Assembly (NCBI RefSeq): GCF_006345805.1 | Contig: NC_043007.1 | Location: 24,366,001 to 24,430,000, forward strand | DNA length: 64,000 bases | Direction of reading: 5' to 3' | Origin: Octopus sinensis | Taxonomy: Eukaryota | In this document: piece after piece, positions 40,647 to 41,797 of the stretch | How positions within the stretch are numbered: position 1 is the first letter of the stretch | Layout: each line of letters opens with the position of its first letter | Notes under the pieces: generated by a model | What the model saw: only the letters and a program-made list of their open reading frames with translations | Told to the model about the DNA's origin: nothing | Databases searched by the model: none | Program-made: the position numbers and the translations under genes

Positions 40647-40951
40647 CACTAGAGGTCAACTTCACTTTCAAAGCTCTGGGGAGGGGAGGGGCAAAACAAA
40701 ATCTTCTAGTCAATAATTGAGACAAGAGGTGGGTAGAGACCAAGAATTAGTCAATATAATTAACTCTTCTTCTTCACCCATCCGCATCATCTTGTGTTTT
40801 GTTTTTTGGTGGTGGTGGTGGGGGGGGGGTTAGGGGAGGGGGTGTTTTCTGCCAAAGCTAGAAATTCTATTTTTTCATGGCTTTTATCTTGGATTTGTGT
40901 TATTATTGTGTATTTTCATGTTTCTTTGTTTTCATGCTTGGATTTTTTTTT

Positions 40952-41310
40952 CTTTTGCCTTTTTGAAGCTTTTTTTGATCAATAATGTGTAAAAACTGAA
41001 ATTGGCTGACCTGTCTGAGATTGTTGGTTAAGTGTTAACAGAAACCAACTTTTTATAATAATAATAATAATAATATTAATAATAATACAGTTATAATAAT
41101 AATGTAGTTATTATTTTTAGTGGTGGTGGTGGTGGTAGTGGTGGTAGTGGTAGTAGTAGTAGTAGTAGCAGCAGCAGCAGCAATAGTAGTAGCAGTAGTA
41201 GTAGAGAAAGATGGCTTCTGTTAACACTTAACTAACACAGTCTGAGACAGGTCAGCTAATTTCAGCTTTTACATACTATTGATTGAATAAAGCTTTCGAA
41301 AGCCAAAAGA
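40952..41310. repeat. ~97-bp inverted repeat around a microsatellite loop
   Basis: 40952-41047 versus 41212-41310: about 84% identity by hand alignment. Confidence 0.88.
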
Positions 41311-41797
41311 AAATGAAAATAATAATAATAATAATACAAAAAAAATAAACGGTTATATGAATGAAAATCCAAAACAAAAGTATAAAAAAAAAACGAACAA
41401 AAATGCTCCCGCCATCATCGCCACCAAAAAGATAATGCAGGAACAAAAACTATTTGGATATTTATCAAAGTCGAATAAAAGAGCGGAGATTTGAAGACAG
41501 CAACCGAACAAAAGAACCATTGTTACTTCCTTTATGTACAACCATTAAAGCTACAAGCCAACGAGGGAAACCTCACTGTAGTTGCTTGATCTGTTAGAAA
41601 TAGCAGCTCTCATGAATCACATCCTGATGTGTCCTTAAAAAAAAAGGAAGGACACACTAGGTAATGTGGTCCAAGGTGGACTATGTCTAGAAGTGATGAA
41701 GATAGAATAACCATGGCTGGTATGTCTTTGATAATAGGTCTGAGGGTTGAATGCTAACTTTTTATTAGATATGGGCCAATGAAGGCAATCTCATCAT

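What the first reader, a model, noticed from the sequence alone, without database searches (positions are those of the whole stretch)
40785..41440. Non-transposon foldback with a well-preserved ~97-bp core and transition-dominated mismatches
40952-41047 pairs with 41212-41310 across a ~165-nt loop made of (ATA)n, (GGT)n, (AGT)n and (AGC)n. In the loop-proximal ~75 bp, 8 of 9 substitutions are transitions, giving G-U wobbles or A-C mismatches, the contexts ADAR favours. Weaker complementarity continues outward to about 40785 and 41440. The arms match no repeat seen elsewhere in the window. Inference: an old inverted duplication whose core is kept paired, possibly as an editing or splicing-control structure. 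Extensive A-to-I editing is established in coleoid cephalopods.
Basis: partly seen in the sequence, partly recalled or inferred. Interest (0 to 1): 0.7.

Follow-up and report, generated by a model that had tools for sequence, protein, structure and literature searches.

The report
Single-copy inverted repeat in CaMKI intron
A real, one-of-a-kind ~105-bp inverted duplication sits deep inside the huge first intron of an octopus CaMKI gene and could fold into double-stranded RNA, but nothing that could be tested suggests it is more than an old, neutrally decaying duplication.

Summary
The core observation holds. Bases 40945-41052 and 41207-41316 are reverse complements (83% over 108 columns, z about 35 against shuffles). 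They are separated by 154 nt of trinucleotide microsatellites. The arms are single-copy in the 2.72-Gb genome, so this is not a MITE; a true foldback family elsewhere in the window was detected by the same search. The locus lies in the 144.6-kb intron 1 of a minus-strand CaMKI gene, 29 kb from exon 2 and 115 kb from exon 1.

The evidence offered for function does not hold. The transition excess (11 ts : 7 tv in the core, 8 : 3 near the loop) equals the genome's non-CpG background (2.1 : 1 in SINE copies). On the transcribed minus strand only 3 of 11 transitions give G.U wobbles; 8 give A.C mismatches. The outward complementarity is chance-level except for one microsatellite-like block. The arms do not pair with CaMKI exons and match no Rfam family. 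The same 64 kb holds 68 comparable inverted repeats.

Most likely this is an old local inverted duplication that folds into an imperfect duplex (91 predicted inter-arm pairs) in the pre-mRNA and is at most an incidental ADAR target. Conservation and editing could not be tested, because orthologous DNA and RNA-seq were out of reach.

The parts
40945..41052 (.). Left arm of the inverted repeat (core). 108 nt, 31% G+C, no CpG.
   Evidence: Its only genome-wide matches are itself and the right arm.
41053..41206 (.). Spacer or loop of 154 nt made of trinucleotide microsatellites: (ATA)n 41055-41103, (GTG)n and (TAGTGGTGG)n 41118-41166, (GTA/AGT/AGC)n 41135-41204.
   Evidence: Tandem Repeats Finder; sequence.
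41207..41316 (.). Right arm of the inverted repeat (core). 110 nt, 34% G+C, one CpG. It is 83% complementary to the left arm with one 2-nt indel.
40780..40830 (.). Possible decayed outer end of the left arm: T-rich tract plus (TGG)5 and a G10 run.
   Evidence: Pairs with 41408-41459. The 23-nt block 40803-40825 / 41408-41430 is 83% complementary. The far-outer alignment has z 4.9 against shuffles. It is microsatellite-like, so only suggestive.
41408..41459 (.). Possible decayed outer end of the right arm (CCCGCCATCATCGCCACCAAAAA...).
40350..40648 (+). Context only: a ~300-bp SINE copy with a tRNA-like head (by eye; ARAGORN calls no tRNA), about 300 bp left of the core left arm (about 130 bp from the possible outer end at 40780). 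The family is very abundant in the genome.
   Evidence: 13,635 first-look candidates, copies 92-95% identical; consensus; ARAGORN.
41800..42065 (+). Context only: a second copy of the same SINE (with an internal deletion), in the same orientation, right of the foldback. The two SINEs are direct repeats and are not part of the inverted repeat.
   Evidence: sequence compared; partial matches.
11869..12003 (-). Context only: CaMKI exon 2 ([45 protein letters not shown]). It fixes the host gene's strand as minus.
   Evidence: Residues 33-77 of Octopus vulgaris CaMKI-like protein P0001 read the same. Exon 1 is at G000:C11:24522630-24522725 minus, outside the window.

Best explanation
This is an old, local, single-copy inverted duplication of roughly 105-110 bp of unique sequence, possibly about 270 bp originally. 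Its spacer has filled with expanding trinucleotide microsatellites. It lies deep in the 144.6-kb first intron of a minus-strand CaMKI gene in an Octopus genome, most likely O. sinensis. It probably arose by a replication template switch or fold-back event and has since drifted neutrally. When the intron is transcribed, the minus-strand RNA can fold into an imperfect duplex of 91 predicted inter-arm pairs with a longest uninterrupted helix of 21 bp. That makes it one of many intronic dsRNAs that ADAR could edit promiscuously before the intron is degraded. It has no selected role in CaMKI editing or splicing.

Shown: the repeat, its uniqueness, its location and strand, its predicted folding, and its background-like substitution pattern. 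Inferred: the origin mechanism, transcription of the intron, incidental editing, and neutrality.
For: The repeat is real and highly significant. The arms are single-copy in the 2.72-Gb genome. The method is validated by a positive control: the foldback at 6232-6450 has 615 first-look candidates, with copies of 74-87% identity found in both orientations. The 16.7% arm divergence excludes a long-read palindrome assembly artefact and indicates age. The gene context is a minus-strand CaMKI with exon 2 at 11869-12003 and exon 1 at C11:24522630-24522725; the hairpin is 29.1 kb and 115.5 kb from them. The ts:tv of 11:7 (core) or 8:3 (loop-proximal) does not differ from the non-CpG neutral 2.1:1 measured on 21 SINE copies, and the arms have 0 and 1 CpG. 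On the gene's strand, 8 of 11 transition mismatches are A.C, not wobble. The mid-outer arms are at chance level. The minus-strand fold is -124.5 kcal/mol, with 91 inter-arm pairs and mean pair probability 0.97. The repeat meets the operational definition of a potential intramolecular dsRNA used for metazoan editomes including octopus: reverse-complement hit of at least 80% identity and at least 50 nt within +/-2 kb (PMC9989829). There is no Rfam family and no tRNA in it. It has no complementarity to the exon 1 or exon 2 neighbourhoods apart from microsatellites. There are 68 comparable inverted-repeat pairs in the same 64 kb.
Against: Neutrality is argued from one genome only. With 18 mismatches the ts:tv and G.U/A.C tests have little power (G.U 3 of 11 against 0.5, P = 0.23). 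No orthologous sequence, RNA-seq or small-RNA data could be examined, so conservation, covariation or editing cannot be excluded. The duplex is still strongly predicted after about 17% arm divergence, and identity is somewhat higher near the loop (6 mismatches in the first 50 columns against 12 in the next 58). Weak selection or arm-to-arm gene conversion could also produce that gradient. The plus strand folds better (8 G.U against 3 A.C), which leaves room for an antisense transcript. The SINE copies used as the neutral control were the best BLAST matches, so they are a biased sample for dating, though less so for ts:tv.
Confidence: 0.75

Rival explanations
1. It is a selected intronic dsRNA element. 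The paired core is maintained because it recruits ADAR, as an editing-inducer or sponge, or because it modulates CaMKI pre-mRNA processing.
For: The predicted duplex is long and stable on both strands. There are 8 A.C mismatches on the gene's strand, and A.C is a context ADAR edits well (established knowledge). It is unique sequence rather than a transposon. [quoted passage not shown] The host gene is a neuronal kinase.
Against: The transition bias equals the background. On the transcribed strand most transitions break pairs rather than wobble. The hairpin is 29 kb from the nearest exon and does not pair with exon sequence. It loops out only about 370 nt of a 144.6-kb intron, so it cannot bring splice sites together. 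Dozens of equal or better inverted repeats lie in the same intron segment. No Rfam match.
Confidence: 0.07
2. It is a low-copy or last-surviving MITE or foldback transposon, or two ancient copies of one element inserted head to head.
For: It has a palindromic architecture, is AT-rich and has a microsatellite centre. The genome is rich in such elements, including a true foldback family at 6232-6450 in the same window.
Against: No other copy was found anywhere in 2.72 Gb at E <= 1, although the arms are only 17% diverged from each other and the same search recovers family members at 74-87% identity for the control element. No target-site duplication is evident at the arm ends by inspection.
Confidence: 0.08
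3. It is a hairpin-RNA (endo-siRNA) or other small-RNA precursor, transcribed on its own or processed from the intron, possibly from the plus strand, which folds better.
For: It is a single-locus inverted duplication with helices of 21-22 bp. The plus strand has 8 G.U against 3 A.C and a lower free energy.
Against: The arms have no other match in the genome, so there is no target gene with extended complementarity. The 105-nt arms and 154-nt loop do not fit a canonical pre-miRNA, and no miRNA family hit falls inside the arms; the Rfam miRNA hits nearby sit on (CA/TG)n tracts and are below gathering score. No expression data are available.
Confidence: 0.03

Closest known systems
Intronic inverted-repeat dsRNAs that are promiscuous ADAR targets (for example inverted Alu pairs in human introns and 3'UTRs; repeat-derived dsRNA in metazoan editomes, PMC9989829)
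   Same: Intramolecular duplex of about 100 bp at about 83% identity within a few hundred nt, located in a pre-mRNA intron. It meets the BLAST-based dsRNA criterion used in that study (>=80% identity, >=50 nt, within +/-2 kb).
   Different: The arms are not copies of a dispersed repeat but a unique local duplication. Editing has not been observed here.
Hairpins created by replication template switching (short template-switch mutations; fold-back inverted duplications).
   Same: It is a local reverse-complement copy of adjacent unique sequence that gives a ready-made stem, with no transposon hallmarks.
   Different: The arms (>=105 nt) and spacer (154 nt) are longer than typical short template-switch events. 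The spacer is now microsatellite, so the original junctions are not recoverable. The mechanism is inferred, not shown.
MITEs and foldback transposons
   Same: Palindromic, AT-rich, intronic.
   Different: Copy number is one locus, against at least hundreds for the control element at 6232-6450. No target-site duplication was seen.
Exon-intron editing complementary sequence (ECS) structures such as those directing site-specific recoding (GluA2 Q/R; cephalopod and Drosophila channel transcripts). From established knowledge.
   Same: An intronic sequence forming dsRNA in a neuronal gene of an animal that edits heavily.
   Different: Both arms are intronic and pair with each other, not with an exon. 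The nearest exon is 29 kb away.
Drosophila hpRNA (endo-siRNA hairpin) loci. From established knowledge.
   Same: A single-locus inverted duplication able to form a long hairpin.
   Different: No target gene with matching sequence, no evidence of independent transcription or small RNAs, and shorter arms.

Membership tests
MITE / foldback transposon | Multiple dispersed copies in the genome | tested here: not met
   The core arms match only themselves and each other in 2.72 Gb and nothing else in the window. The positive control at 6232-6450 gave 615 candidates.
MITE / foldback transposon | Terminal inverted repeats flanked by a target-site duplication | tested here: inconclusive
   The inverted arms are present. 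By inspection there is no direct duplication at 40945/41316 or 40780/41459, but the ends lie in T/A-rich low-complexity DNA and the boundaries are uncertain.
Potential intramolecular dsRNA / ADAR substrate (operational definition of PMC9989829) | Reverse-complement alignment of >=80% identity and >=50 nt within +/-2 kb | tested here: met
   83% over 108 columns, arms 154 nt apart. The criterion is quoted.
Potential intramolecular dsRNA / ADAR substrate | Both arms lie in one transcript | tested here: inconclusive
   Both arms lie in intron 1 of a minus-strand CaMKI gene, between exon 1 (C11:24522630-24522725) and exon 2 (window 11869-12003). Transcription itself was not observed. An alternative first exon modelled in O. 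bimaculoides maps downstream of the hairpin at 16572-16643, and transcripts starting there would exclude it.
Potential intramolecular dsRNA / ADAR substrate | Clustered A-to-G RNA-DNA differences on the transcribed strand | not testable with these tools
   No RNA-seq access.
Conserved structured RNA element | Presence and covariation of base pairs in orthologues | not testable with these tools
   Orthologous DNA could not be fetched. The O. vulgaris gene range (257.8 kb) is too long for DNA retrieval. The metagenome pattern scan found 0. The ORF-based homologue search found 0. The genome has no relatives in the genome search (header).
Conserved structured RNA element | Match to a curated RNA family | tested here: not met
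   The Rfam E-value scan of 38000-44000 gave no hit within 40785-41440. Nearby hits are sub-threshold miRNA models on (CA/TG)n tracts. ARAGORN found none.
Conserved structured RNA element | Excess of pair-preserving changes (G.U wobble) on the transcribed strand | tested here: not met
   On the minus strand there are 3 G.U against 8 A.C among 11 transitions, plus 7 transversions. The ts fraction does not differ from the neutral 0.675.
Editing complementary sequence (exon-intron duplex) | Complementarity between the intronic element and an exon of the host gene | tested here: not met
   blastn-short of the hairpin against exon 2 +/-500 nt and the exon 1 locus gave only microsatellite matches.
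pre-miRNA | Hairpin of about 60-80 nt with a short terminal loop; match to a known family | tested here: not met
   Arms of about 105 nt with a 154-nt spacer. No Rfam miRNA hit in the arms.
hpRNA / endo-siRNA locus | Arms share extended complementarity with a target gene elsewhere | tested here: not met
   No other genomic match to the arms.
hpRNA / endo-siRNA locus | 21-23-nt small RNAs from the arms | not testable with these tools
   No small-RNA data.

The most novel reading that the evidence does not exclude
The foldback is a lineage-conserved, selected dsRNA module in CaMKI intron 1 of octopods. It would be a dedicated ADAR-binding or dsRNA-sensing element whose 8 A.C mismatches on the sense strand are edited to I.C, tuning duplex stability (for example with temperature) and thereby co-transcriptional processing or CaMKI output in neurons.
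Probability: 0.04. Interest if true: 0.55.

Novelty: new member of a known kind. Interest (0 to 1): 0.15.

Why it matters
If it were a conserved, edited regulatory hairpin, it would be a rare example of a non-repeat, deep-intronic dsRNA with a function in a cephalopod neuronal kinase gene. That would bear on why coleoids maintain so much ADAR activity. As it stands it is mainly a calibration case. In this genome, transition-rich mismatches in a foldback are the mutational background (non-CpG ts:tv about 2, and over 5 where CpGs are present). The strand of the host gene also has to be known before G.U and A.C mismatches can be read as RNA-level evidence. The locus remains a clean, single-copy test substrate for anyone calling hyper-editing in octopus nuclear RNA.

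Tried and rejected
1. Multicopy MITE: rejected by genome-wide searches, with a positive control.

2. Assembly artefact (long-read palindrome chimera): rejected because the arms differ at 17% of positions.

3. Transition bias as a sign of selection: rejected against a SINE-derived neutral spectrum.

4. Extension of the stem to 40785/41440: only the far block beats shuffles, and the middle does not.

5. Exon-pairing ECS: rejected.

6. Known RNA family, tRNA or miRNA: none found.

7. Attempts to get orthologous sequence all failed.
   - The look-up of encoding contigs on the O. vulgaris CaMKI protein returned no DNA, because the gene range of 257.8 kb is too long.
   - An exact-pattern scan of metagenome contigs with a degenerate 40-nt core pattern gave 0 hits.
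   - The search for homologous proteins with the 62-aa ORF overlapping the right outer arm, in the hope of a Logan contig from another octopus, gave no candidate.

8. The first fetch from genomes failed on the size limit; it was repeated in 10-kb pieces.

9. I did not build a covariance model of the two arms, because the gain in sensitivity from two sequences is small.

Full report
**What is in the sequence**

Reading 40600-41650 and running the repeat finders confirms a foldback.
- A gapped alignment of the left side against the reverse complement of the right side places the well-paired core at 40945-41052 and 41207-41316.
- The core has 108 aligned columns, 18 mismatches and one 2-nt indel, which is 83% complementarity.
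- The 154 nt between the arms (41053-41206) are trinucleotide arrays: (ATA)n, (GTG)n, (TAGTGGTGG)n and (GTA/AGT/AGC)n.
- The core alignment score is 125, against 17 +/- 3 for dinucleotide-preserving shuffles; no shuffle out of 300 reaches it.
- The 656-nt region folds far better than shuffles on both strands: plus -243.9 kcal/mol, z -14.4; minus -184.5 kcal/mol, z -12.1.

- In the loop-proximal 76 columns I count 8 transitions and 3 transversions, not 8 of 9. Over the whole core the count is 11 to 7.
- The outward complementarity is uneven.
  - The stretch 40861-40944 against 41317-41394 scores no better than shuffles (z 0.3).
  - Unrelated T-rich segments of the window align better to the A-rich right flank than the true left flank does.
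  - Only the far block (about 40780-40830 against 41408-41459) beats shuffles (z 4.9). It includes TTTTTGGTGGTGGTGGTGGGGGG against CCCGCCATCATCGCCACCAAAAA, and it is microsatellite-like.
- The duplicated unit may originally have been about 270 nt, with a slippage-scrambled middle, or it may have been only about 110 nt. Either way, the contrast between a preserved core and decayed outer arms does not need selection. Complex sequence stays alignable, and homopolymer or microsatellite sequence does not.

**Copy number**

- The window is G000:C11:24366001-24430000 in a genome of 2,719,151,902 bases in 13,516 contigs.
- The 111-nt left core finds only itself and the right arm genome-wide.
- The right arm plus its outer part finds only itself, the left arm and some low-complexity A-rich matches to its outer part.
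- Within the window, a sensitive blastn finds only the partner arm.
- As a positive control I ran the same search on another foldback in the window, 6232-6450 (97-nt arms, 92% complementary, 25-nt loop). It returned 615 first-look candidates and dozens of scored copies at 74-87% identity, in both orientations.
- The method therefore detects MITE-like families of this age, and the finding is not one.
- The 2-kb search also showed that the foldback lies between two copies of an extremely abundant ~300-bp SINE with a tRNA-like head. They sit at 40350-40648 and 41800-42065, both in plus orientation. They are direct repeats and play no part in the hairpin.

**Gene context**

- The only clear coding exon in the window is on the minus strand at 11869-12003. 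It reads [45 protein letters not shown] and is CaMKI-like.
- Further CaMKI exons lie downstream on the minus strand, between about C11:24269000 and 24291500.
- A composite of these exons retrieves 'calmodulin-dependent kinase type 1-like [Octopus vulgaris]' (P0001) and 'calcium/calmodulin-dependent protein kinase type 1 [Octopus bimaculoides]' (P0002) as best hits at 91% identity; the query lacks one exon.
- The first 32 residues of P0001 match C11:24522630-24522725 on the minus strand at 100%.
- Intron 1 is therefore 144,623 bp. The hairpin centre is 29.1 kb upstream of exon 2 and 115.5 kb downstream of exon 1 in the sense of transcription.
- The O. vulgaris gene spans 257.8 kb.
The species assignment is an inference.
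The strand is the new fact that matters.

**Does the mismatch pattern indicate selection for pairing?**

- I fetched 20 copies of the flanking SINE, aligned them with the window copy and counted differences from the majority consensus.
- The result was 206 transitions to 39 transversions (5.3:1). Of the transitions, 125 were at consensus CpG sites. The non-CpG ratio was 81:39 (2.1:1).
- The hairpin arms have 0 and 1 CpG, so the relevant neutral transition fraction is about 0.675.
- Against that fraction:

| Count | P(at least this many transitions) |
|---|---|
| 11 of 18 (core) | 0.80 |
| 8 of 11 (loop-proximal) | 0.50 |

- The transition excess is the mutational background.
- A transition mismatch is a G.U wobble on one strand and an A.C mismatch on the other. 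On the minus strand, which is the CaMKI pre-mRNA, only 3 of 11 are G.U and 8 are A.C. That is the opposite of what pairing-preserving selection on that transcript would favour, though it is not significant (P = 0.23).
- A.C is a good ADAR context (established knowledge), but a G-to-A or T-to-C mutation in any neutral duplex produces it.

**Could it still act as dsRNA?**

- Yes, in the trivial sense. On the minus strand, 40940-41320 folds at -124.5 kcal/mol with 91 inter-arm pairs (62 A-U, 26 G-C, 3 G.U). The longest uninterrupted helix is 21 bp and the mean pair probability is 0.97.
- It satisfies the operational definition of a potential intramolecular dsRNA used in a 22-species editome study that included octopus: a reverse-complement hit of at least 80% identity and at least 50 nt within +/-2 kb (PMC9989829).
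- That paper also describes a strong repeat-targeting preference of A-to-I editing and treats pairing of nearby inverted repeats as the conventional source of long dsRNA substrates.
- The same 64 kb holds 68 inverted-repeat pairs of at least 60 nt within 2 kb. This one ranks 24th by arm length, and many others are longer and better paired.
- The intron therefore offers ADAR many equal or better substrates.

**Specific functional models**

| Model | Result |
|---|---|
| Exon-pairing editing site complementary sequence | Excluded. The hairpin shares only microsatellite matches with exon 2 +/-500 nt and with the exon 1 locus. |
| Splice-site approximation | Implausible. The stem loops out about 370 nt of a 144.6-kb intron and is tens of kb from either splice site. 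|
| Known RNA family, tRNA or pre-miRNA | No match. The Rfam hits near it are sub-threshold miRNA models on (CA/TG)n tracts outside the arms. |
| hpRNA-type siRNA precursor | No target. The arms match nothing else in the genome. |
| Assembly artefact | Excluded by the 17% arm divergence. |

**Origin and age (inference)**

- The arms differ by 16.7% (JC 0.19, about 0.09 per arm).
- The adjacent SINE copy differs from its family consensus by 18 of 299 positions, mostly at CpGs.
- The duplication therefore looks older than the neighbouring SINE insertion and is plausibly tens of millions of years old. I have no calibrated neutral rate, and the O. bimaculoides split at about 34 Mya (bioRxiv 10.1101/2023.05.16.540928) is the natural benchmark to test.
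- A unique inverted copy next to its source, without transposon hallmarks, is what replication template switching or fold-back repair produces (my own knowledge of that literature). The microsatellite-filled centre would then be secondary.
- A T-rich-(GGT)n motif occurs at 40797-40836 and again, in direct orientation, in the spacer at 41111-41150 (families D1 and D3). It occurs in inverted form at 41408-41430. This hints at a more complex duplication history but rests on microsatellite similarity alone.

**What could not be done**

- Conservation, covariation and editing are the decisive tests, and all were out of reach.
- The genome has no relatives in the genome search.
- A degenerate core pattern found nothing in metagenome contigs.
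- An ORF overlapping the right outer arm has no homologue in the protein collection.
- The verdict therefore rests on within-genome evidence.

**Verdict**

This is a real, statistically overwhelming, single-copy inverted duplication in CaMKI intron 1. The reading 'kept paired as an editing or splicing-control structure' has no support from any test that could be run and is contradicted in spirit by the strand analysis and the neutral control. It is most likely a neutrally decaying foldback that is at most an incidental ADAR substrate. Interest is low.

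Noticed in passing
window 6232-6450: A tight foldback (97-nt arms, 92% complementary, 25-nt loop) that belongs to a multicopy palindromic, MITE-like family. It gave 615 first-look candidates genome-wide, with copies at 74-87% identity hitting in both orientations.
   Followed up: partly
window 40350-40648 and 41800-42065 (and loci L007-L026): An abundant ~300-bp SINE with a tRNA-like head (over 13,000 first-look candidates). 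Among 21 copies, 125 of 206 transitions from the consensus fall at CpG sites (ts:tv 5.3 overall against 2.1 at non-CpG). This is a strong CpG-decay signature and suggests germline methylation of these elements.
   Followed up: partly
window 16572-16643 (minus strand): The N-terminal 24 residues of the O. bimaculoides CaMKI model P0002 (MSGTLLYTRRPLLCSRSVKPGSSD) map here at 83% identity. Residues 26-39 read through the intron sequence just upstream of exon 2 (SIISLHFR). 'LLTTQPLLC'-like peptides recur at several places in the window, so this 'first exon' may be repeat-derived or an annotation artefact. Transcripts starting here would not contain the hairpin.
   Followed up: partly
window 40807-40845 (plus strand): A G-rich run, (TGG)5 G10 TTAGGGGAGGGGG, with G-quadruplex potential on the plus strand, which is the template strand for CaMKI transcription.
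   Followed up: no
window 53955-54474 / 55473-55820 and 44893-45291 / 45756-46156: Two sets of nested long inverted repeats (arms of 100-125 nt per segment, 85-94% complementary, 0.5-1.7 kb apart). They look like terminal inverted repeats of DNA transposons or inverted element pairs, and they are better dsRNA candidates than the finding.
   Followed up: no
window 48029-48389 (plus strand) and 59654-60073 (plus strand): ORF fragments that look like Tc1/mariner-type transposase, judged by eye and not scanned against any family library. For example, MEVTKEHIRHILLHEFNKSNN...VEELAEKLGF resembles a mariner N-terminal helix-turn-helix region. They suggest DNA-transposon remnants in the intron.
   Followed up: no
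window 33213-34707, 19538-20030, 28325-29732: Very long trinucleotide and other microsatellite-derived arrays give spurious ORFs of up to 352 aa (poly-T/I/S/H/P). The same class of repeat fills the hairpin's spacer.
   Followed up: no
G000:C5:21081358-21082008 (minus strand): An intronless 331-aa open frame matching CaMKI residues 19-237 at 50% identity with no stops. It is a possible retrogene or single-exon CaMK-family paralogue.
   Followed up: no
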